The notes under the pieces were generated by a model, which saw nothing but the letters and a program-made list of their open reading frames with translations, made no database searches and was not told the DNA's origin. From NCBI RefSeq assembly GCF_023055435.1, contig NW_025964112.1, positions 40,548,001 to 40,612,000 on the forward strand: DNA of 64,000 bases, written 5' to 3'. Position numbers and translations under genes: made by a program. Source of the DNA: Haliotis rufescens. Its lineage: Eukaryota. This document shows positions 9,424-23,204 of the stretch, piece by piece; the stretch's first letter is position 1, and each line of letters starts with the position of its first letter.

Positions 9424-10650
9424 TGTGTCACAGTAGAATAATAGTTACTTGAATCGAGACATAAACTTGATACAGAACTGAAGGTGTAAATAGTCTACAG
9501 CATTATCATGACATCTTTACAATATTGCAGATTTTTAGATTGAATTTCCAACAAGTGTTCCTGTACAAGCACAATGTGTTCATCTTTGTCATGATAGGTA
9601 AACACACAACTCTTGAATCACATCAACAATTCATTAAAGAGAGAATAACCAGTCGAAGCAGATTCCACTGGGCGTAAAAAGCGAAATAGCGTGGAAACTT
9701 ATATGAATGCATCACTCAAATTCGACAGACATTATTTTCGAAATTGATTTAATTAAACATAAATATATGTAAAAAATATATGTAATATGTCCCGAGTACA
9801 ACGGCCTCTTTTATTAGTCCATCAGCACTCTGTAACTTACCTTTTATGTATTTGTCTCTGTATAGGTCACATGTTCATGTATCTACATGTATATAATTAG
9901 GCCGCTAGCAACAGGATATTTACAATGACTCTATCCTCTCGACACCATGTATATTTAAACACTGTCATCAGTGGAATGTATAATTGAGAAGCCGAATCAA
10001 TATATCGCCATTATACATCCCCCATATTTACAATGAGGAATCTCAATGAGGAACTATACATTTGTTTTACTTAAAACTCCGAAAGACGTTCTCGTATGAA
10101 TACAGGAGCTGAGATATCTCTGTGTGCTATTGTATGACTCTGCTGCTCAAAATATGTCCACAAAAAATTAATAGATTAGAAAACAATAGTGCATTGTCAA
10201 GGCTATTTGTGACTAGAAACTGGGAACATATTTCAAGTCATCATTTCGTGATCGGTCCATGAGAACGGTTTGCAAGTACCATCGTATCATTATTGGGAAG
10301 GATACTGGAAACTGTTGACATGTACCACCGCATTCCCAAGAACTGGGAAACAGTGTGTATGTATCATCGTATCGTTGAGAAGGGTATTTAGAAACACTTT
10401 GTGGGTACCATCATATTTTAGGGATGTATGATAGCGTAAATATTGCAGATGACATCGTTTTATCCAAACGAATGTTAAAAAACATCATCTAACTACCAAT
10501 TTTCTTCTGGCTAAGGCTTACAGGGAACGTGTTGCAGGTATCATCATATTGTCGAGAAGAATACCCTTGAACAGCCTGAAGATATCATCGTATCGAGAAG
10601 GATACAGGGGTAAAGACTGATGGTGTCATCATACTGTCCAGCAGGATATT

Positions 10651-12870
10651 TGGGAACAGGTTAACAGTATCATTATATTATCCACAGGCTACTGGGGAAC
10701 AGGTTAACCGTGTCATTATATTATCCACAGGCTACTTGGGAACAGGTTAACCGTATCACTATATTATCCACAGGCTACTTGGGAACAGGTTAACAATATC
10801 ATTATATTATCCACAGGCTACTGGGGAACAGGTTAACAGTATCATTATATTATCCACAGGCTACTAGGAAACAGGTTAACAGTAGCATTATATTATCCAC
10901 AGGCTCCTCGGGATCAGGTTCACAATATCATTATATTATCCACAGGCTACTGGGGAACAGGTTAACAGTATCATTATATTATCCACAGGCTACTAGGGAA
11001 CAGGTTAACAGTAGCATTATATTATCAACAGGCTACTGGGGAACAGGTTAACAGTATCATTATATTATCCACAGGCTACTGGGGAACAGGTTAACAGTAG
11101 CATTATAGTATCCACAGGCTACTGGGGAACAGGTTAACCGTTTCATTATATTATCCACAGGCTACTGGGGAACAGGTTAACACTATCATTATATTATCCA
11201 CAGGCTACTCGGGAACAGGTGAACAGTATCATTATATTATCCACAGGCTACTGGGGAACAGGTTAACAGTATCATTATATTATCCACAGGCTACTCGGGA
11301 ACAGCTTAACAGTAGCATTATATTATCCACAGGCTACTGGGGAACAGGTTAACAGTATAATTATATTACCCACAGACTAGTAGGGAACAGGTTATTAGTA
11401 CCATTATTTTATCAACAGGCTACTGGGGAAAAGGTTAACAGTATCATTATATTATCAACAGGCTCCTGGGGAACAGGTTAACAGTAGCATTATATTATCA
11501 ACAGGCTACTGGGGAACAGGTTAACCGTTTCATTATATTATCCACAGGCTACTGGGGAACAGGTTAGCAGTATCATTATAGTATCCACAGGCTACTGGGG
11601 AACAGGTTAACAATATCATTATATTATCCACAGGCTACTGGGGAACAGGTTAACAGTATCATTATATTATCCACAGGCTACTAGGGAACAGGTTAACAGT
11701 AGCATTCTATTATCAACAGGCTACTGGGGGACAGGTTAACAGTATCATTATATTATCCACAGGCTACTGGGGAACAGGTTAACAGTATCATTATATTATC
11801 CACAGGCTACTCGTGAACAGGTTAACAGAATCATTATAGTATCCACAGGCTACTGGGGAACAGGTTAACAGAATCATTATATTATCCACAGGCTACTGGG
11901 GAACAGGTTAACAGTATCATTATATTATCCACAGGCTACTCGGGAACAGGTTAACAGAATCATTATATTATCCACAGGCTACTGGGGAACAGGTTAACAG
12001 TATCATTATATTATCCACAGGCTACTCGGGAACAGGTTAACAGAATCATAATATTATCCACAGGCTACTGGGGAACAGGTTAACAGTATCATTATATTAT
12101 CCACAGGCTTCTCGGGAACAGGTTAACAGAATCATTATATTATCCACAGGCTACTGGGGAACAGGTTAACAGAATCATTATATTATCCACAGGCTACTGG
12201 GGAACAGGTTAACAGTATCATTATAGTATCCACAGGCTACTGGGGAACAGGTTAACAGTATCATTATAGTATCCACAGGCTACTGGGGAACAGGTTAACA
12301 GTATCATTATATTATCCACAGGCTACTGGGGAACAGGTTAACAGTATCATTATATTATCCACAGGCTACTCGGGAACAGGTTAACAGTATCATTATATTA
12401 TCCACAGGCTACTGGGGAACAGGTTAACAGTATCATTATATTATCCACAGGCTACTGGGGAACAGGTTAACAGTATCATTATAGTATCCACAGGCTACTG
12501 GGGAACAAGTTAACAATATCATTATAGTATCCACAGGCTACTGGGGAACAGGTTAACAGTATCATTATATTATCCACAGGCTACTCGGGAACAGGTTAAC
12601 AGTATCATTATATTATCCACAGGCTACTCGGGAACAGGTTAACAGTATCATTATATTATCCACAGGCTACTGGGGAACAGGTTAACAGTATCATTATATT
12701 ATCCACAGGCTACTAGGGAACAGGTTAACCGTGTCATTATATTATCCACAGGCTACTGGGGAACAGGTTAACAGTATCATTTTATTATCCACAGGCTACT
12801 CGGGAACAGGTTAACAGTATCATTATATTATCCACAGGCTACTGGGGAACAGGTTAACAGTATCATTATA
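10651..12870. repeat. 43-bp minisatellite array, ~51-52 copies (TGGGGAACAGGTTAACAGTATCATTATATTATCCACAGGCTAC)
   Basis: Period read directly (tccacagg at 10681 and 10724). Units are head-to-tail with few substitutions and no unique spacers. Degenerate units lie upstream at ~10210-10650. Confidence 0.97.
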
Positions 12871-12971
12871 TGGTGGTCAGGGATACCGAGAATTGTTTTC
12901 TGTTGCAATCACCTGCCATCTTGTATCTTCACGTTTGGTAAAAAAGGTTTTGGACAACAGCTTCCCGGACG

Positions 12972-15900
12972 ATGTCGACTTTCAGATGGAATATTTATTT
13001 CGTGGTCATGACGACATTACCCGCAGTGTGTGATCTCGGTAAGTACAACGTACAGATTTTGACTCAGTGCCATTGATGACATGTGACAATGGGACGTTGG
13101 CTTGGAAATGGTTACACCCAAACCCAAACCCAAACCCAGAGCTACCAAAATGATTGCAAACACCTGGTGTCATCACTGCTTTTTAGTGATCCCTTTATAT
13201 AAACAATTCGAACTCAAAGACGCTTTAAAAAAAATGACAGTATGTGTGAAAAGTAAAACATTTATGCAACAGGTTCTGTGTTTCTTGTGAAAACTGTTAT
13301 GGAACACTTAAAGAAAACGTAAATGGATACTTAACAGTAAACAACAAGTCATATACATCTGCTATTTATGTTTACGTTTCTATGTTAACATAGGTAAAGT
13401 GACGTTTACAACGGTAGGAGCCGGTTCCTTTAAAAATCTCATAGAGAAAGGGGTTGTTGTGGCTGGGAAATCGTCGCTCATGTTCTCCGTCAAGTCCTGT
13501 CACAGTGCCGTTATAGTAATCTCAGACATCATGGCCATCAAGGATACGTCCGGCAACTACTTCCTGCTAATGCTCGGCAACAATGAGAACACCATGGTCG
13601 TAGGTCAGGACAGTTGTTTTGCCTGTAAACGGACGAACTCAACAGCAGTCAAAGCGTTAAACTGTGACGAGATGAAGGATTTCTGGATCAGATGGGACAA
13701 AAAGGGTTTTTTTGAAACGGGATCTGGGACGGCAGTAGGGGTTAATACGTTGTTATCCCTCCAAGGACAGAAGGACATGTACCAAATCAACACCGCCGCT
13801 ATTACGTCCACGAACAAGATAACAGCACTCTGGGAGTTTACGAATGGTAGGTTCAAACAGGATTATGTACATACACACGCATTTTGTTTATAATGGCCCC
13901 GTGGAGGTCCAGGGTAGAATGGACCTCCCCGTGAACCTATGCTGGACGTACGAGGCGACTTAATGAACCGGGTGGTCATGTTCGGTGACTTGGTTGATGG
14001 CGTGTCATAGCACTCCGACGGCGTGGGTCGTTTATCACGATATCAATCACTGAATTGTCTAGTATGACGTTGTCTACCTTGAATATTGCTGAGTGCGGAG
14101 TTAAACAAGAAGCAAAAGCTAGTTTAAGATGGAGATCGTTTCTAGAACTCATGTTATTGAATATTTGATTATATATGTAAGCCGATCAATGAATCTGTAA
14201 TGATGGTCTTTTCTGCGAGCTTTTGTTTTCCAATGGACTCTGGGACTATTATGTAGCTTAGCGCTTATTATGTTCGCGCGTCCGAGTTCAATTCATCGTA
14301 TGCGAAACCAATTATTGGCATTCCCTGCTGCTCTATTGCTGGAATATTCCTGAAAGCAGTATGAAACGATACTACACGCTCATCCTTTCCCCTGGCATCT
14401 AAACCCTTTGTCAAATTAATCCTTACTTATGAAGTCTGCCTGACTATAATAATATTGAATTATATCATATCACAAAAAGACAAATTATATAATGATATAT
14501 ATCACAACTATTGACCGAAACATGAAAGAGTTAAACGGTACGTGCCCTATATGCTATCAATGTGTATTTTCACAGAGGACACAACCACGACTATCTATGA
14601 GCCTGTTCCGAGCGGCAGCACGGTGGTAGAGATGAGTGAGACGACCCCAGTCGGGGCGGATGTGTTCGACATAATCCTGAAGCCGCCCAACGAGAATATA
14701 ACATTCAGATTAAACGGAAAAACGGCTGACATGTTCTTTGTAAATAAAACAAAGATCAAACTTGCGAAGAGTCTGGACTATGAGATGAAGCAGTTCCATA
14801 CACTGTCAATATCGTGAGATAATTAATAACATTCATATATTGGGAGAGTAGATTCTGTTAGAGTGAGTGAGTTTGGTTTAACGCCGCTTTAACAGTTTTT
14901 TCAGTTATATCACGGCTTGTGAGCGTAATGTCGGAGGAAGCCCGAAATGATGCAGGTCTCAGACGTTTATCCCTTTCGGGAAACCCACAAGCGGGGATAT
15001 AGAGCTGACAAACCTAGAAACATAATCGGGGCGAACCTGAATGCGAACCCATAATCATAGGATTCTGGCGTATCCAAGGAACGCAACTCTAAACAGCGAA
15101 TTGCGGCGCCTTAGACGACTGAGCCAACCGGCCCCATTCTTAAGATTAGAAATTTTTTATCTATGGAAAATAATTTAACGTCGAGATGATTATTATCATA
15201 TGTCGAAGATAATATGGTTGATGTCTATTGAGTGCTAGTGTTGTTCTTTATATCCTGACCAAAAGAAATTTCGTATGAGATTGTGTGCTCGGTCTTTACA
15301 AGAAAAAAAATACAAACAAAATATTTGTTCAGTTTTGTAGGATGGAACAATTATACATATAATACAAAAAAAATATTTGTTCTGTTTTGTAGGATTGAAC
15401 AAATATACATATTATACACTTTCAACCTTTGTGAGATTATACGTTTTAAATATTAAGCGTAGATGATACATTATACATAGTTGCACATAGGTGATTCCAT
15501 TTGTAGCTGCAGAAACGGACAATACGTGCACGTTTCTGATGATATTGTTCGGGTTTATTTGATACCCCTTGAATTTTGTTTCAATATGTTGTCAGCACAA
15601 CTGCTGGACTATCCGCTTCAATGACTATCGTTGTGCTGAACGCAATAGACGAAATTCCTCAAGTAAATGTCAGTGACCTCGTAATACCGGAAGAACTGCC
15701 TGTCGGTACAGTGATTGGATGGAATCTTACAGTACTAGACCCTGACACAAATGATACATTGTCCTACAAGATAGAAGGTATTTATTTTGTGTTTTGTTTT
15801 CTATACATTCGTGAGTATGCTATGCCCTTGTTCAGATATGACCTTGCAATTGACTCAGTTCTGTGACAAAATGCATGGGTCCTAACACGACTAAGGGACG

Positions 15901-18900
15901 TAACTCGTGAATATTAAGAACAGTCATTCAATTGATTAGTGTAATTACTGTGTTTATTCTAACTGATTCTTGATTCCAATAGCACAAGGTTATGAACTGC
16001 AATTTCTAACTTAGCTAATATTTCTAGTAGATTATCAATTTCTCTTCCTGACATGTAGTATTGTTTCGTTTTTCCTAGGCGTCATAAGTGACATGTTAAC
16101 AATTCTACCAAATGGGAATCTTCAAGTCACAAAGAGAATAGACCGAGACACTATGGACAACTCCAGCATCGTGAGCAATCTTACCGTCAGTGTGTCTGAC
16201 GCTAAACCTCACACCGTCACAGTTACTATTCCTGTGGAGATCAAGGACTTAAACGACAATCGGCCACAGTTCAACCAAACTATTTACCGGACTGAAACAC
16301 AAGAAAAACCAACCAAAGGTATCTTACAGTGTCGACTGTCGTATTTTGTTTAAAAATTATACACGATAGTTAGCTTCAACTCAAAGTACCCGAGACCTAT
16401 TGGCTTAGTCTTATGTTATAACTTTTAAGTGCAATTGTATTAATTTTACATTTGGAGTGCAACGGGAGTAAACGTAATGATTCCACTTTACACGTGGTTT
16501 AATTTGACGGATAATTCTTGTTTGATATTAGAACGATAAGGCTAATGAAATATGAAAATGAAAAAGGTCTCTCCTAGAGTTATGCCAGGATACATAATGT
16601 AATATAACCAGCGAATCTTTCCAGTATCAGACCAACTATTAAGATGGAGCAGACTTGTTGCCCGAGGTTTTGTCCATCAGATAATTCTCCTTAACTCGTC
16701 TACCAAGGGCATTATGTTGTGTATTCCAACGCTTTATAAAGCTTATACATTTTCTAAAAGACGTCCTCAAACGAAATAGAGAGGGGAGGTCTTAAGGGAC
16801 CAGTTCAAGTTTTGGGGCATACCTCTCCACCCGCCCCCCAAAAATAATTCCGAAGTTTCTTTACCGCTTTTGTCACGCATTCTTGTGCTTTCCATTATTT
16901 TTCAGAACATTTATCGACTGATGTTTATTTGCTAGGTGTTGAAAATACTTAGTAGACTTTTTATAGAATCTGATCAAATCTGCCATTCTGTATTACGCAC
17001 TGCACAGATGGACTTACCGCTATTGCCGGCGACTATTCAGTCCTACCTTGTGGACGAATGGATGTACTTTGTGACAAATCCTAACAGCATACGAATGAAA
17101 ATAGGATCGGATTAGTTTAATTCCTATGTAACACATTGAGAAATCAGGTAAGATTATTGTGTATGCATCCGACTTGGAAGTTTTGAACTGGCCCCTAAGA
17201 CACAGTGTGTATATCATTTAGAGTTAGTGTGATAATGAACACGGGACATGTCCTAACAGACGGGCGAACGCTGAACATGTGACAGATGCATTTAATTTGA
17301 CTTCAGATAGATCACTATTGACCCTGTCAGTCTGGGATGTGGATGAGGGTGCGAATGGTCATGTGAATCTGAGTATCCTGGAAGGTGGCAACAGTTTTTA
17401 CCTGAAGAACAACACTCTGTACGTCAAGGCTGGCCAGCTGGACTATAAAAGAACAAGCACCCATGAGGAGACTGTCATTGTGCAGGCGGTCGATCTACCT
17501 GAATCGGGTCCTTCTCAGTCAGAGACAATCGTCGTCCTTGTTCAAGTGAGTTTTTGAAATATTTGAATTTAGCATTAATAACGATATGTGTTCTGTACAT
17601 ACATAAAAATGATTTTCTTGGAATTTGTCTAGGAGATATTGTTGGAATCGAGGTGAAACACAAAGAGGTACATTGACCTTGGTTACACATTGATAGTATC
17701 TTCGCAAATATTTTGCAGGTATAATTTGAAGTATTATGAGTACTATGTATCATGAATTCGTGTTACAGTTATTCATATTTACTCTGACCCCGCCGTGATA
17801 TTGCTGGAATATTGCTAAAAGCGGCGTAAAACCATACTCACTCACTCACTCATATTTACTCTGTAGGTTCTTCAAAAGGAAGCACAACTGATTGCTTGGC
17901 TCTCGCCAGCGTCAGACGGCATAGGTAGCTTTAAAGAAATTGTGATGTCGAGTTCGACCCCACCTGGAAGTACAGTTACTAAATTTGAGGTTTCCACCGC
18001 CAACAGCAGTGACATCATTCGCTACAATGTTACATCAAAGTCTTCTGCAGGTAGGTGTACGTTTGTATTGTTCTCACACCCACAACACTGTATGACAGTT
18101 TGACCAAAATAATTTAAAGGCCATGAATAGTGGTTGAACGGAGGACTGGTAGTCGAATGTGCTCAGTTGTTAACATCTGCTTGGTCGCTGTTTTAAATGC
18201 TTGGTGTTAACCCCATCTATTATCCTTGGGATGTCCGTTTTAATGTTTCGTCCTGCCTTTTTAACGTATCAAATACGCAACAAAACTTATAAAAACGCTA
18301 TTGAAATATAATTAATGCGTAAATTATAAATATCAGATAAAACGAATCTGTATATTACAACTGCTTGATAAAATGATTGTGTATCAGCCGATTCACCTAC
18401 CGACAGTTACATTCGGAAAAGCTTCTGTGACAAACATACTGATAGATACCAATTGAAAAGCTCATCGTGCCTAGTTAATGTTCATGTTGTATCTTATTTA
18501 GTCTCTGATTGGTAATTCAAACAACAGTGCCTTTCTTACAATAATAAGTTTTGCAAACAAAAAATGGCTTCCGGAGAGGGAGCCGAAGCAATACGCAGAC
18601 AGGTATACTACTATTCATGTAGTTTTAAATTATTTACAGGGATTGTTACGAAACAGGTTTTAAGTTAAATTCCCAAATGTCAAGAAAGAGGTGGGTAAAA
18701 AAATGAATACCCTCTAAAGCTTGTGGATACCCAATCAAAATCAAACCCCTGGGTAAAATACCCAAATGACCAAAAGCTTATCTTTTGCTCTGTTATGTAT
18801 ATCATAAGTGAAGAAGAGTTACAGTGATTGACAGATATTTTTCAGACACTCCATCTAAGTTTTAACCTTTACTTTCGAGATGAACGATGAATGTCATGCA

Positions 18901-21900
18901 ATTCTTTCATGACGTCGTTTCTAGAGATTCATTATGGTGACGTAGTAAATTGGACGATCCTATTTTTGCACCCCTATTTGTTTATTCTCCCTGCAGTGTT
19001 TTATTGCAAGATACATACTCCTCCCGTTGGTTTCTTAAATATCCAAAGTTTACTGACATGGCACAAAAACAATTCGTGGTGTAACACGTCTTCATTAAAA
19101 TGGTTTGAATATTCTATTCTTCCTCAGAGTTTGATCTCAACCCTCATACAGGTGTGCTGAAGACAAAGTCGAAGTTAGAAAGGCCATCCTACACTGTCAT
19201 TATTACTGCAACCAACGGCAATATCTCAATCAGCGGCACCTTAACAGTTATGGTCCAGAAAGCATTAGATACAAACAAGAACGATTCCCAAACTGTTCAG
19301 TTTGATAGATCCGTGTATGTGGTATCAAGACCAGTCATGGGGGATGAAGGCAAATCTCTTGTAAAAATTCGCGTTCTCGCCCCAAATGCATCTGTCATTA
19401 ACATTTCAATGGACGACGAAGGTAAGAAGGCATTCGTGTTGAAGAAAGGAAACCATTTCTGGAATCTTGTAGCCAGGCAACACGCTGTTTCTATGCCTTC
19501 TGTCATAAACCTTACCGCCATAGATCTGAATAGCACTAAAAGAGTAACTTCGTTTGTTGTGGTGAATGGTTCATTCACGATACAGGGAACACCATCCCAT
19601 ACTGAAGCTAGGACCTCAAGGGCATCTACAAACACACCATCATGCGCCACACAGTCGTCGGCCGAAATAGTTACAGCAACTGAGTCACAACATACCACAG
19701 CTTCTACAACTGTGGCAACTACGATGACGACGACGACCGTAATACCGACCACCGTTACAGCATCTACCCATCAAACTAATATTGGATCAGATTCAACAAC
19801 GATGAGAGGTAATCAGATCGTTTTTCACTAAAAACAAGATGAAACTTGTAAACAACTGGATTGGACATGCAACGTTTATTTTATGAAAGAGAGCAAAACA
19901 CCATAATTGATCTTTTTCTCCTTCACAGAATGTCCTCCCCCAAGCAAAACGAAAGAAGTTGCCTACATCAGCGTCATAGCTACCCAGGGTCTGGCTGTGG
20001 GAGCTCTGATAGGAGTTAAAGTTTTTGCAATAATGAAAAGGTTGGTAAAAATAGCGGTCAAATGTCATTGTGTCAAGGCCACTTATCTTCAAATATCGTC
20101 AACCATTTTATTTCAAAATATATATATTAAAATATGGGTTTCATATTTACACAAAGCATTTCAACTCGTCAGTTGCCACTGTAGCTGAAAAACTGATCGA
20201 GTTCACTCATCCAAAAGTTCTTTCTACAAAATCATTGATCTCTCAATCACTTGTATCTCTCATTCAGACCATGCTCCCTTTAACTCTCATAACGTCTCGA
20301 AATCATTCAACCATTTGCCCCTACACAGATCCACTCGCCTCTTTCACTCACCCCGGTCCGTGAAGATCCGGCTGAGAACTGGTCTTCAGCAACCCATACT
20401 TGTCTTAAGAGGTGACTAACAGGATCAGGTTGTCAGAATTTGAAGCATGACATTGTATCCCAATTGCGTAGATCGATGATCATAGTGTTAATCACTGGAT
20501 TGTCTGGTCCTGAATCAATTATTTACAGAGCGCCATTGCTGCTGGAATATTGCTGAGTGACGCATTAAACAACAAATAAACAGTCACCTTCTTGGTTCAC
20601 CACTGATCCCCTTTCACTTGTCCCCCTCTGTATAATGGTGATCACCACTTTGTCAGTCAAGTGACCTCTCTAACTAACCCATTAACGCCTTGGGGATTCA
20701 GAGGTAGATTAGACTATGCTTATGATATAATCCATGTAAACTTTGCTTATGCTGACACGACTGGTTGCGTTTCATCGTCTCTCGTCGAAGAGTGCTCATG
20801 TATTCAGTGACAGATTTGGCCGACGATCCAGACTCGATTGTTTGAAGGCTGCTATGAAATTTGTGGAATGTTGCTCAATGACATTCACCGGTCACTGGTC
20901 CATTAAAGCCACCTCTGACCATTCCCACTGGTTTCTTTCACACGCCCATTTAATCCTTTCATACGTCCATTGGTTCCTCTTATTAACCCACAGATTTCTC
21001 TCGCATTATCTTACGTTTTCTTATGTCTCACTCACCTGCTCATCCCTCCTACTCGATGCCACGTTTCATAGTGCAACAATTCCACCAATCCCTCTTTCAG
21101 TGCTATACAGTTCAACGACACAAGCTACTTTTTATGCTTTCTTAATATGACAGGAAAAAGAAGAAGAACGCGATAGAGCCCGAAAGGCGAGAACCTGTTG
21201 GATGTGAACCAGGTACTTTCATTTATGAAACTAGCCTATATTCAACACGTATGTCATTTCAGCTTCTTGCCAGAAACGTCATGGTAATGTCAGGAGTGGT
21301 GATTAAGCTGAGATGGCATAGTCCTTATTTATGCAGAAGTAGTTAAATAGTTAATACCATGATTTTGACGTTCCACGCACAATATTATTAAACACAAGTT
21401 TAAACTTTGTCCTTTTAGTGTGTTTGAGAAGAGATATTCGATATCTAAGTAGAACATGTAGATACGTTCCCATTGGAAAACAATTTATTCACATTCACCC
21501 ATCCTCAACTGAATGTGTTTTTTATTTCAAAGGATAACTTTGCTATTCCTCAATCACGCGTGATATGGAAATATACATTTTTTTCTTCATCATTGATCAC
21601 GTTGTGTCTAATTATTATGTTTTCTAGAACGAAATTACTCTTCAAGAAAAGGAAATATAAAAAATGAAGCCACTTGTGAAGATACCATTTTGGAGATCGA
21701 AGACGAAACCAAGAACAGAAACCATATTTATAGCAAGGATCCAGTACATGGAAAGGAGTGGACTCAAGATAACCTCAACCAACATAGCCTTAAAGATGTA
21801 AACATTGAGAGCGACGCTGTAGTGTCTGGGAAACTGTCTTGCCTTGAAGTTGGGAAAGATTGTCTCGAGGATTCCAGTTCAACACACAGTAACGATTATG

Positions 21901-23204
21901 ATACTGGTGACAAAGAATCTGTTAAACCTGATGCTGCTGATTCAGAAGTAAAACAAACATACCCTGACGAGGGGAAACGGTGTGGTACGGAAGAAAGAGG
22001 ATCTTCAGTAGTTGAACCTTCAGAACTACCAACAAACCACGAAACTGAAGATCACAGTAAAGCTGATGATTCAAATGTGTCAGATGATGTTTCTGAAAGA
22101 AAGGCAGACATCGGTACATGTCAACCTGAAGTACTGAATGAGGGAGAAACAGCCACTGATCATGAGGAGACAGATAGAAAACCTATTTTAAGAGACGAGG
22201 AAATTAAAGAGTATGATGACATTCTGAATCAAGATATGACTACAGTCGAGAGCCATGTTGAGACGGGTAATAACACCATAGAGGAACCTCTTAGGCCCAA
22301 TACTGAGGGTACATTGGATGGTGAAAAGTCAGAAGAACCGTGGAATCTCCAAGGATTGACTCCTGCATATTTAAGCCATTTGCCCGGTAACACGCCAGAA
22401 AGCCCAACACAAGACGAAGAAAAAAATGCATCTGTGTATGCAGAGAGTACTGTGAATGAGACAGTGGCTCTATCGGACTTCATTGCCCAAGATGATGACT
22501 TTGACTACACCATCAGTAGAATGGAAGAAGGAAATCGGGCAATGAAGGATAACACAATGGACACCCAAGTAAATATCGACTCTCTTCCAAATTTCCAAGT
22601 TCGTGATATGTACAGCAGAGTACACACATCACCGTCGGAGATGACCTCGCCATGCATCCTCGTCGAGAAGAGGGAACAGAAACATGTTATAAACAACACC
22701 AATATTAACAAACAAAAGGACCAGAATAAAGTATCTGGCCAAACTCAGGCTGTAGACACCCTTATATCGAGGATAAGTCCTTCTGAGGGTGCAGGCACAC
22801 AACACTCTGTCTTACCTCAAACAGGACAACTATTTCCAGAAACTGCATCTAATGCACATAAGAACAACACAAAAGTAACTGACAATGGTTTCAATTCAGA
22901 AGATGACGACGACGATGAGGAAGAAGAAGAGGAGGGGGAAGACATAAAGGAGCCAGCACCAGAAGGTAATGGTACAGCCCCTGCTACAACATACCTTTCA
23001 TCACAAACAGTGGCGGCATTGAACATAGAGTCTGTCAAGCAAGATGTGACGAGGCCCCAGGCTCAGAACATCCCAGTAGACACCATTCCCCCAGAGACCA
23101 AAAAGTCAAAAAAGGATGGAAAGAAAAAGAAAGGCGAAAAGAAAGGCAAATCAAAAAAGAAAGGTGCTTCAAAGAAAAAGAACAAGAAAGGAAAAGGAAA
23201 ATAG
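12972..23204 (+). CDS. Cadherin-repeat type I membrane protein with an N-terminal FAMeT-like (Methyltransf_FA) domain; 11 coding exons, ~1343 aa
   Basis: Hand-spliced exons: 12972-13038, 13394-13846, 14576-14813, 15596-15777, 16079-16318, 17307-17545, 17867-18050, 19128-19808, 19929-20040, 21154-21212, 21628-23204. All junctions are GT-AG with consistent phases, total 4032 nt, ending in TAG. Exon 1 is signal-peptide-like (MSTFRWNIYFVVMTTLPAVCDLG). Cadherin motifs include LDYE, PEELPVGT, LDPD, IDRD, DLNDNRPQF and WDVDEGANG. There is a Thr/Ser-rich stalk and a TM segment VAYISVIATQGLAVGALIGVKVFAIM followed by KRKKKKN. Confidence 0.85.
13394..13846 (+). CDS. Exon 2: farnesoic acid O-methyltransferase-like (Methyltransf_FA / FAMeT-like) domain
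   Basis: FSVKSCHSAVIVIS...YFLLMLG..EN...LNCDEMKDFWIRWD..GFFETGSG...INTAAITS....ALWEF follows the family pattern as I recall it: F.VKAC.DA.I.L / YEI.IGG..N / LSC.E.R.FWISW..G.I.VG / W.F. The whole domain sits in one phase 1-1 exon. Confidence 0.75.
13897..14112 (+). mobile_element. SINE-like family A, divergent subfamily, in cadherin-gene intron 2
   Basis: cccgtggaggtcc...ggacctcc...gaggcgact...gagtgcggagttaaac. Confidence 0.78.
14240..14382 (+). mobile_element. Old, degenerate SINE related to family C
   Basis: B-box-like gagttcaattc and a 3' end attgctggaatattcctgaaagcagtatgaaacgatactacac. Confidence 0.55.
14861..15135 (-). mobile_element. tRNA-derived SINE family B, in cadherin-gene intron 3
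   Basis: The reverse complement matches 9152-9423. Confidence 0.82.
17787..17850 (+). mobile_element. Young 5'-truncated SINE 3' fragment (family C) in a splice-acceptor tract
   Basis: TSD CATATTTACTCTG at 17774-17786 and 17851-17863; acceptor AG at 17865-17866. Confidence 0.9.
20357..20581 (+). mobile_element. SINE-like family A, in cadherin-gene intron 9
   Basis: ccgtgaagatccgg...ggtcttcagcaacccat...cgcattaaacaacaaataaac. Confidence 0.8.
21628..23204 (+). CDS. Terminal exon: acidic, low-complexity cytoplasmic tail with a Lys-rich C-terminus
   Basis: The acceptor ttttctag at 21627 is in frame with ORF 21690..23204. The exon is D/E-rich and ends KKSKKDGKKKKGEKKGKSKKKGASKKKNKKGKGK*. Confidence 0.85.

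What the first reader, a model, noticed from the sequence alone, without database searches (positions are those of the whole stretch)
12972..23204. FAMeT-like domain fused to a mucin-stalked cadherin: an unusual receptor architecture
Seen: a clean 11-exon ORF giving signal peptide, FAMeT-like domain (one symmetrical phase 1-1 exon, typical of a shuffled module), ~5 cadherin repeats, Thr-rich stalk, TM and a long tail. Established: classical cadherins adhere through an N-terminal EC1. Methyltransf_FA domains also occur as probably non-enzymatic extracellular modules, for example in CPAMD8, and in many mollusc proteins. Vertebrate CDHR5 has a comparable EC + mucin + TM layout. Inference: EC1 is capped by a putative ligand-binding module held away from the membrane, so the protein looks more like a sensing or recognition receptor than a homophilic adhesion molecule. 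I do not recall this combination being characterised.
Basis: partly seen in the sequence, partly recalled or inferred. Interest (0 to 1): 0.8.

Follow-up and report, generated by a model that had tools for sequence, protein, structure and literature searches.

The report
Lectin-fold-headed cadherin of abalone
This red abalone gene encodes a membrane protein with a galectin-like "FAMeT" head on a short cadherin stalk; it belongs to an undescribed gastropod family of at least seven such genes, and its ligand, expression and function are unknown.

Summary
On the + strand, 12972-23204 has 11 GT-AG exons with consistent phases, 4032 nt (1343 codons plus stop).

- **Order of parts:** signal-like exon; one 453-nt phase 1-1 exon matching Pfam Methyltransf_FA (34.2 bits, cut-off 24.2); four cadherin repeats seen piecewise; a fifth unverified domain; a 76-residue Ser/Thr-rich stalk; a transmembrane helix; a 19-codon basic microexon; a 524-codon acidic tail ending in lysines.
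- **Head fold:** it models confidently (pLDDT 93.8) as a concanavalin-A-like/galectin-like beta-sandwich (Z 11-12.6), not a methyltransferase fold.
- **Not a one-off:** the genome is Haliotis rufescens. At least six other loci carry the same head-then-cadherin order. In one, head and first cadherin repeat share a single open exon.
- **Public models:** RefSeq models auto-named "protocadherin-like" in three Haliotis species and Gigantopelta have both domains.
- **Literature:** no paper in the searched library mentions both domains.

Another first-stage note (s1-810368) reports the same architecture elsewhere in this genome.

Verdict: a real, uncharacterised variant of the cadherin superfamily; moderate interest.

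The parts
12972..13038 (+). Exon 1: start codon and signal-peptide-like segment (22 codons + 1 nt, ends in phase 1)
   Evidence: Read from sequence: ATG with A at -3, a hydrophobic run, then a GTAAGT donor. Paralogue proteins P0151, P0034 and P0108 also have a hydrophobic N-terminus directly before the head. SignalP was not available.
13394..13846 (+). Exon 2: FAMeT-like (Pfam Methyltransf_FA) head domain, 453 nt, phase 1-1
   Evidence: PF12248 34.2 bits, E 2.6e-8, cut-off 24.2. AlphaFold2 with 82 homologues gave pLDDT 93.8, all beta. Fold matches: CBM66 Z 12.6, galectins Z 11-12, L-type lectins. At least 50 single-exon relatives in the genome.
14576..14813 (+). Exon 3: short Thr-rich linker and most of cadherin repeat 1
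   Evidence: PF00028 22.8 bits. Colinear tblastn hits in paralogues (E 1e-9 to 3e-17). There is no basic or furin-like site at the head/EC1 junction (sequence).
15596..15777 (+). Exon 4: end of repeat 1 and start of repeat 2
   Evidence: No Pfam hit alone. tblastn to paralogue exons 34-48% identical. A DxD-type motif is visible in the translation.
16079..16318 (+). Exon 5: rest of repeat 2 with a full DxNDNxPxF linker motif, and start of repeat 3
   Evidence: PF00028 16.5 bits. The motif is read from the translation. Paralogue hits.
17307..17545 (+). Exon 6: cadherin repeat 3 (DxDxGxN motif)
   Evidence: PF00028 29.7 bits, above the 28.8 cut-off. Nine own-genome relatives, six of them near a same-strand FAMeT-like exon.
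17867..18050 (+). Exon 7: first half of repeat 4 (degenerate)
   Evidence: Open frame with an acceptor and a CAG|GTAGGT donor. No Pfam hit; assigned by position and pattern only.
19128..19808 (+). Exon 8: end of repeat 4, a roughly 95-residue membrane-proximal domain of unverified fold, and a 76-residue Ser/Thr-rich stalk
   Evidence: PF00028 19 bits on residues 6-49 of the piece. Colinear with the equivalent exon of the C2 paralogue, 21% identity. Stalk 47% S+T, 7 N-glycosylation sequons. The AlphaFold model was unusable.
19929..20040 (+). Exon 9: transmembrane helix
   Evidence: Highest hydropathy of all exon pieces (1.81 over 19 residues), followed by K/R. Same exon position as the TM exon of the C2 paralogue.
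21154..21212 (+). Exon 10: 59-nt basic juxtamembrane microexon with a conserved P-(V/I)-G-C motif
   Evidence: Read from sequence. tblastn hit in the C235 paralogue (47% over 19 aa, E 0.006). A microexon at the same position carries the same P-(V/I)-G-C motif in the C2 paralogue's RefSeq model.
21628..23204 (+). Exon 11: 524-codon cytoplasmic tail, acidic (21% D+E, a run of 13 D/E), ending in about 30 residues rich in lysine; stop at 23202-23204
   Evidence: Lies in a 530-codon open frame; composition. Only a sub-threshold Pfam hit (CDV3 19 bits) and no relatives by word search. The C2 paralogue's last exon is also a long acidic open frame with a K-rich end, but it is not alignable.

Best explanation
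This is an intact gene of Haliotis rufescens for a type I membrane glycoprotein of the cadherin superfamily. It belongs to a lineage-restricted, so far undescribed family in which a FAMeT-like head follows the signal peptide directly, ahead of the first cadherin repeat.

Shown here:
- The exon structure.
- The two domain families.
- The lectin-like beta-sandwich fold predicted for the head.
- The same head-then-cadherin order at six or more other loci and in RefSeq models of other gastropods.
- The conserved TM exon / microexon / tail exon layout.

Inferred:
- The head is not an enzyme. It is a binding module for a glycan, a matrix component or a protein.
- It stays attached, because no basic cleavage site lies at the junction.
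- Four cadherin repeats, a fifth domain and a probably O-glycosylated stalk hold it roughly 20 nm from the membrane.
- Only the linker between repeats 2 and 3 has a full calcium-binding motif set, so the rod is probably only partly rigid.
- The long acidic tail with a polybasic end is disordered and serves signalling or scaffolding.

The most likely role is a cell-surface recognition or matrix-anchoring receptor rather than a classical homophilic adhesion cadherin.
For: - **Gene model:** (all GT-AG, consistent phases, 1343 codons).
- **Domains:**
- **Head fold:** pLDDT 93.8. Foldseek top hits are galectins, L-type lectins and GH16. VIA-align gives CBM66 Z 12.6 and galectins Z 11-12 over 120-140 residues.
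- **Family in the genome:** relatives of the EC3 exon lie 4-21 kb downstream of FAMeT-like exons on the same strand. Exon-by-exon tblastn is colinear at C1, C2 and three C235 loci. In the C1 paralogue, head and EC1 are one 251-codon open frame.
- **Public proteins with both Pfam domains:** P0001, P0027, P0034, P0108 and P0131, from Haliotis and Gigantopelta.
- **Tree:** our head groups with other cadherin-linked heads (SH-aLRT 91-93).
- **Constraint:** against a roughly 2% diverged individual or sister taxon, the listed exon 1-3 differences are 6 synonymous and 4 non-synonymous. All 12 listed indels are non-coding.
- **Extracellular use of the domain:** architectures; papers PMC9382459, PMC6003135, PMC9363628.
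- **Glycosylation:** 20 N-glycosylation sequons in the ectodomain exons.
Against: - No transcript evidence could be obtained. The runs that hold the locus are DNA (contigs cover the introns) and the possible RNA runs are sparse.
- This gene's own product was not seen in the protein collections. The best hit to exon 2 is a 47% identical paralogue.
- Three of the four cadherin matches are below Pfam's cut-off when scored exon by exon.
- The fifth domain is unverified.
- A shared fold does not show sugar binding. Identity to galectins is 6-12% and there is no Gal-bind_lectin Pfam hit.
- Ligand binding, retention of the head and the role of the tail are inference only.
- Antiparallel protocadherin-type or handshake-type trans binding could tolerate an N-terminal cap.
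Confidence: 0.7

Rival explanations
1. It is mainly a cell-cell adhesion cadherin (homophilic, or heterophilic with a paralogue). The FAMeT-like head only modulates or extends the trans interface, much as other cadherin-related proteins use extended N-terminal contacts.
For: Cadherin repeats with at least one complete calcium-binding linker. A family of paralogues could supply combinatorial partners. Its nearest non-family relatives are Fat-like and protocadherin-like proteins.
Against: Most inter-repeat linkers have lost calcium-binding motifs (translation). No catenin-binding or other known cadherin cytoplasmic domain was found. Heads of the same clade also cap EGF-type membrane proteins, which suggests the head carries its own function independent of the cadherin stalk.
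Confidence: 0.2
2. The model joins two genes wrongly. Exons 1-2 would make a small secreted FAMeT-like protein, like the abalone shell-matrix protein UP5. Exons 3-11 would belong to a separate cadherin gene.
For: Many 130-200-aa single-domain FAMeT-like proteins exist. Reading through the exon 2 donor meets a stop after 15 codons, so an unspliced product is possible. No RNA evidence for the junction was obtainable.
Against: Exon 3 has no start codon or signal peptide of its own in its open stretch. The phases match (1 to 1). The same head-then-cadherin order recurs at six or more loci, inside single RefSeq proteins and inside one exon at the C1 locus.
Confidence: 0.05
3. The locus is a recently silenced or unexpressed duplicate whose reading frame is still intact.
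For: No protein of this locus was found in public sets by the searches possible here. A 2.2-kb minisatellite ends about 100 bp upstream of the ATG. The tail has no detectable relatives.
Against: 4032 nt stay open over 11 exons with intact splice sites. The listed exon differences from a 2% diverged genome are mostly synonymous, and all listed indels avoid the exons. The searches could not see proteins of 1343 aa from exon-sized queries, so absence means little.
Confidence: 0.05

Closest known systems
RefSeq paralogues in Haliotis and Gigantopelta: XP_048242089.1 'protocadherin gamma-A2-like' and XP_046330605.2 'protocadherin Fat 3-like' (H. rufescens), XP_071102907.1 (H. cracherodii), XP_046561080.1 and XP_046562252.1 (H. 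rubra), XP_041372466.1 (G. aegis)
   Same: Signal peptide, FAMeT-like head, cadherin repeats, Ser/Thr-rich or similar stalk, single TM. The TM exon / microexon / tail exon layout and the juxtamembrane P-(V/I)-G-C motif are shared with the C2 paralogue.
   Different: Heads are only 27-47% identical. The models are 530-924 aa with short tails, against 1343 aa here with a 524-residue tail. Intron positions around the head differ. These are automatic names; no study of them was found.
CDHR5 (mucin-like protocadherin) of vertebrates (from general knowledge)
   Same: Few cadherin repeats, a Ser/Thr-rich juxtamembrane region, one TM and a non-classical tail.
   Different: CDHR5 has no non-cadherin N-terminal head and has true tandem mucin repeats. 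Here the stalk is 76 residues without repeats. No sequence relation was shown.
Calsyntenins/alcadeins, and the laminin-G-bearing cadherins Fat, CELSR/Flamingo and DN-cadherin (from general knowledge)
   Same: They combine cadherin repeats with a concanavalin-A-like beta-sandwich domain. Calsyntenins also have an acidic cytoplasmic region.
   Different: In those proteins the ConA-like (LNS/LG) domain lies between the cadherin repeats and the membrane. Here it is the outermost domain and belongs to a different sequence family (PF12248).
Hedgling of sponges and cnidarians (from general knowledge)
   Same: A non-cadherin signalling or binding domain sits at the N-terminus of a cadherin-repeat membrane protein.
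   Different: The head is a Hedgehog N-terminal domain, the protein is much larger, and the lineage is different.
Other FAMeT-domain proteins: arthropod FAMeT, CPAMD8, sea-star footprint proteins, abalone shell protein UP5
   Same: The same Pfam domain. It is extracellular and of unknown function in sea-star adhesive and mollusc shell proteins (PMC9382459, PMC8194122, PMC6003135, PMC9363628).
   Different: None of those is reported with cadherin repeats or as the head of a type I membrane protein. Arthropod FAMeT is a two-domain soluble protein.

Membership tests
Cadherin superfamily | Tandem extracellular cadherin repeats matching PF00028 | tested here: met
   Four exon pieces match (22.8, 16.5, 29.7 and 19.0 bits); one is above the 28.8 cut-off although the repeats are split by introns. 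They are colinear with paralogues that score 56-152 bits.
Cadherin superfamily | Calcium-binding linker motifs (DxD, LDRE-type, DxNDNxP) between repeats | tested here: inconclusive
   Read from the translations. The set is complete between repeats 2 and 3 and degenerate or absent at the other linkers.
Classical (type I/II) cadherins | Catenin-binding cytoplasmic domain and a pro-peptide-exposed EC1 with Trp2 | tested here: not met
   No cadherin cytoplasmic Pfam family in exons 9-11. EC1 is preceded by the head without a basic cleavage site.
Clustered protocadherins (the source of the RefSeq names of the paralogues) | Six repeats plus TM encoded in one large variable exon spliced to constant exons | tested here: not met
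   The ectodomain is spread over exons 2-8, with four to five repeats.
Methyltransf_FA / FAMeT-like domain (PF12248) | Sequence match above Pfam's gathering score | tested here: met
   34.2 bits against 24.2. It has the near-invariant Cys pair, three Trp and the G-x-G of an 82-sequence family alignment.
Farnesoic acid O-methyltransferase (enzyme) | A SAM-dependent methyltransferase fold or demonstrated activity | tested here: not met
   The predicted fold is an all-beta sandwich of the lectin/glucanase type. Activity is not testable here.
Galectins | Gal-bind_lectin sequence signature and beta-galactoside binding | tested here: not met
   No PF00337 hit at E <= 0.1. Only the fold is similar, at 6-12% identity. 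Sugar binding is not testable here.
Mucin-like protocadherin (CDHR5 type) | Tandem mucin repeats between the last repeat and the TM | tested here: not met
   No tandem repeat in exon 8; only a 76-residue stretch with 47% Ser+Thr.

The most novel reading that the evidence does not exclude
Basal gastropods (Vetigastropoda and Neomphaliones) evolved their own class of surface receptors. In it, one clade of lectin-fold FAMeT-like heads was placed by exon shuffling on either cadherin or EGF-type stalks. These receptors would recognise glycans or matrix, for example tying mantle or other epithelia to the shell matrix or mucus, where secreted FAMeT-like proteins are known, or sensing microbes. That would be a cadherin-based matrix or pattern receptor with no counterpart in model organisms.
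Probability: 0.2. Interest if true: 0.65.

Novelty: new variant of a known kind. Interest (0 to 1): 0.45.

Why it matters
Cadherin function is usually explained through the outermost repeat. A whole family in which that repeat is capped by a lectin-fold module suggests a different use of the cadherin rod: a spacer that presents a binding head.

It also gives the widespread but functionally unknown FAMeT-like extracellular domain a tractable membrane-anchored context. That domain occurs in shell matrix proteins, sea-star adhesive proteins and CPAMD8.

Automatic names such as 'protocadherin gamma-like' hide this architecture. In some members the head scores below Pfam's threshold (P0151: 22.6 bits), so domain-architecture databases under-report the family.

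Tried and rejected
- **Transcript test:** The look-up of sequencing runs and read laying. The four runs laid are contigs. X2 and X4 cover the introns at about 40x, so they are DNA of a roughly 2% diverged animal. X1 and X10 are sparse. No exon-exon joint was seen, so splicing could not be tested.
- **Word search with exon 2**: nothing at E <= 1e-10.
- **Word search with the tail**: nothing.
- **Word search with paralogue P0151**: swamped by generic vertebrate protocadherins.
- **Spliced products in Logan ORFs:** the ORFs in the paralogue clusters read into introns, so they are genomic, not spliced.
- **AlphaFold of exon 8** with a 2-sequence alignment: pLDDT 31.8, unusable.
- **PDB by sequence profile of the head:** no chain at E <= 1.
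- **Tail against the C2 paralogue's tail:** no alignment (E 12). Only composition and layout are alike.
- **Downstream of three other FAMeT-like exons** (C235:1.81 Mb, C68:5.07 Mb, C135:5.42 Mb): no cadherin exons within 10 kb. By tree placement two of these belong to EGF-type genes.
- **Joined protein:** it was deliberately not assembled, searched or folded. SignalP, DeepTMHMM and InterProScan were not available.
Full report
**Observation.** The + strand between 12972 and 23204 carries an 11-exon reading frame. I checked it base by base.
- Exons: E1 12972-13038, E2 13394-13846, E3 14576-14813, E4 15596-15777, E5 16079-16318, E6 17307-17545, E7 17867-18050, E8 19128-19808, E9 19929-20040, E10 21154-21212, E11 21628-23204.
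- Every intron is GT-AG and the phases chain.
- The total is 4032 nt, which is 1343 codons plus a TAG stop.
- Exon 2 is 453 nt and phase 1-1.
- I never assembled, searched or folded the joined protein.

**Domains.**
- Exon 2 matches Pfam Methyltransf_FA (PF12248) at 34.2 bits, E 2.6e-8, above the 24.2 cut-off.
- Cadherin (PF00028) matches four pieces: E3 at 22.8 bits, E5 at 16.5, E6 at 29.7 (cut-off 28.8) and the start of E8 at 19.0.
- Introns cut each repeat, which explains the low single-piece scores.
- Read from the translations, the linker between repeats 2 and 3 has the full DxNDNxPxF and DxDxGxN set. The other linkers are degenerate.
- The middle of E8 (about 95 residues) is colinear with the equivalent exon of a paralogue. 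It has no Pfam match, and its AlphaFold model failed (pLDDT 31.8). The count is therefore four supported repeats plus one unverified domain.
- Next comes a 76-residue stretch with 47% Ser+Thr and no tandem repeat.
- E9 holds the most hydrophobic 19-residue window of the gene (1.81), followed by basic residues.
- E10 is a 19-codon basic microexon.
- E11 is a 524-codon tail with 21% Asp+Glu and a run of 13 acidic residues. Its last 24 residues carry a net charge of +13.
- There are 20 N-glycosylation sequons in exons 2-8.

**The head.**
- An alignment of 82 homologues shows a near-invariant Cys pair, three Trp and a G-x-G.
- AlphaFold2 on it gives pLDDT 93.8 and pTM 0.89, an all-beta fold.
- Foldseek against the PDB is led by galectins, L-type lectins (VIP36, ERGIC-53, Emp46p), GH16 enzymes and carbohydrate-binding modules.
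- The independent VIA-align search gives CBM66 at Z 12.6, galectins at Z 11-12, then SPRY and laminin-G domains, over 120-140 aligned residues at 2.6-3.0 Å.
- The head is therefore a concanavalin-A-like beta-sandwich, not a SAM-methyltransferase fold.
- Identity to the lectins is 6-12%, and there is no Gal-bind_lectin Pfam hit. Sugar binding is a lead, not a result.
- No PDB chain matches the family profile by sequence.

**Which genome, and is the architecture a one-off?**
- Contig lengths identify the genome as the Haliotis rufescens RefSeq assembly.
- Exon 2 has at least 50 single-exon relatives in the genome.
- Relatives of the EC3 exon lie 4-21 kb downstream of FAMeT-like exons on the same strand.
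- Exon-wise tblastn shows the same exon order at these loci:

| Locus | Strand | Public protein |
|---|---|---|
| C1:29.72 Mb | + | XP_046330605.2 (P0027) |
| C2:41.97-41.99 Mb | - | XP_048242089.1 (P0151) |
| C235:5.81-5.83 Mb | - | not identified |
| C235:1.93 Mb | + | not identified |
| C235:1.96 Mb | + | not identified |

- By tree placement, C68:19.40 Mb is the orthologue of H. rubra P0034.
- At the C1 locus, the head and the first cadherin repeat lie in one uninterrupted 251-codon open frame. This shows the fusion at the DNA level, without any RNA evidence.
- Intron positions vary. An intron splits the head in the C2 gene. The head is a separate exon here and at C235:5.8 Mb. It is fused to EC1 at C1.
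- The TM exon, a microexon of about 57-59 nt with a conserved P-(V/I)-G-C motif, and a long last exon are arranged alike here and in the C2 gene.

**Other species.**
- The exhaustive HMMER search with exon 2 found 217 proteins at E <= 1e-3. The best was only 47% identical.
- Among those I scanned, five combine PF12248 with PF00028: P0001, P0027, P0034, P0108 and P0131.
- They come from H. cracherodii, H. rufescens, H. rubra and the vent snail Gigantopelta aegis, under automatic names such as 'protocadherin gamma-A1-like', 'Fat 3-like' and 'stan'.
- A Littorina cadherin and a Haliotis 'Fat 4-like' cadherin related to the stalk lack the head.
- Elsewhere the domain accompanies the following, in molluscs, an annelid, a brachiopod and amphioxus: MAM; WSC and fn3; PAN; C-type lectin; galectin and sushi; fibrinogen-C; F5/8-C; GH16; EGF_laminin; and an adhesion GPCR.
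- In a tree of 117 heads, ours groups with C235:5.8 Mb (SH-aLRT 93), and then with the C2 gene and its H. cracherodii orthologue (SH-aLRT 91). This sits inside a 30-row clade (SH-aLRT 85) that holds all cadherin-linked heads and the heads of MEGF10-like EGF proteins.
- A single origin of the cadherin link is not excluded.

**Constraint and expression.**
- The runs that hold the locus (X2, X4) are DNA of a roughly 2% diverged animal. Their contigs cover the introns.
- The differences listed in exons 1-3 are 6 synonymous and 4 non-synonymous. All 12 listed indels are non-coding. The numbers are small and the list is partial, but they fit purifying selection.
- Logan ORFs in the paralogue clusters read into introns and are genomic.
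- I could not find this gene's own product in the protein collections. Exon-sized queries cannot see a 1343-aa protein in the word search, so this says little.

**Literature.**
- No paper in the library holds both Methyltransf_FA and cadherin.
- FAMeT domains are reported in the following, always with unknown function:
  - sea-star footprint adhesive proteins (PMC9382459);
  - Mytilus shell-repair genes, with reference to Haliotis shell proteins (PMC8194122);
  - the secreted H. laevigata shell protein UP5 (PMC6003135);
  - CPAMD8 (PMC9363628).

**Interpretation.** The gene is real and intact, and it belongs to an uncharacterised family.
- What is shown: the structure, the domains, the predicted fold and the family.
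- What is inferred:
  - The lectin-fold head binds a ligand.
  - The head stays attached, since no basic site lies at the head/EC1 junction.
  - The cadherin rod mainly presents the head.
  - The acidic, polybasic-ended tail is disordered.
- The tail's layout recurs in the last exon of the C2 paralogue. That RefSeq model stops early at an internal donor. The two tails do not align.

**Verdict.** It is a new variant of a known kind and of moderate interest. A first-stage note on another piece of this genome (s1-810368) describes the same kind of protein, which agrees with the family found here.

Noticed in passing
window 10626-12871: A 43-bp minisatellite, 52 copies, 93% matches. It ends about 100 bp upstream of the gene's start codon.
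   Followed up: partly
window 13900-14300, 14700-15300, 17700-17899, 18300-18899: The introns hold very high-copy repeats. Summed contig depth reaches 7 million at 17700-17899. The element at 17788-17852 ends 15 bp before the exon 7 acceptor.
   Followed up: no
L026 2939-4342 (G000:C2:41967939-41969342, minus strand): The RefSeq model XP_048242089.1 of the C2 paralogue ends at an internal GT after ...DDQ. The genome frame stays open for about 400 more codons, giving an acidic tail with a lysine-rich end. This points to a possible longer isoform or a truncated annotation.
   Followed up: partly
L027 2552-3517 (G000:C2:41997551-41998516, plus strand): A partial copy of the C2 paralogue's tail exon on the opposite strand, about 28 kb away. 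It is 93% identical over the part matched and diverges at its end.
   Followed up: no
G000:C68:5068106-5068537 and G000:C135:5415975-5416358: FAMeT-like heads of the same clade cap EGF_laminin/MEGF10-like membrane proteins (P0157, P0028). One head type therefore sits on two kinds of stalk.
   Followed up: partly
window 13847-13893: Reading through the exon 2 donor meets a stop after 15 codons. An unspliced transcript would encode a roughly 190-aa secreted single-domain FAMeT-like protein.
   Followed up: no
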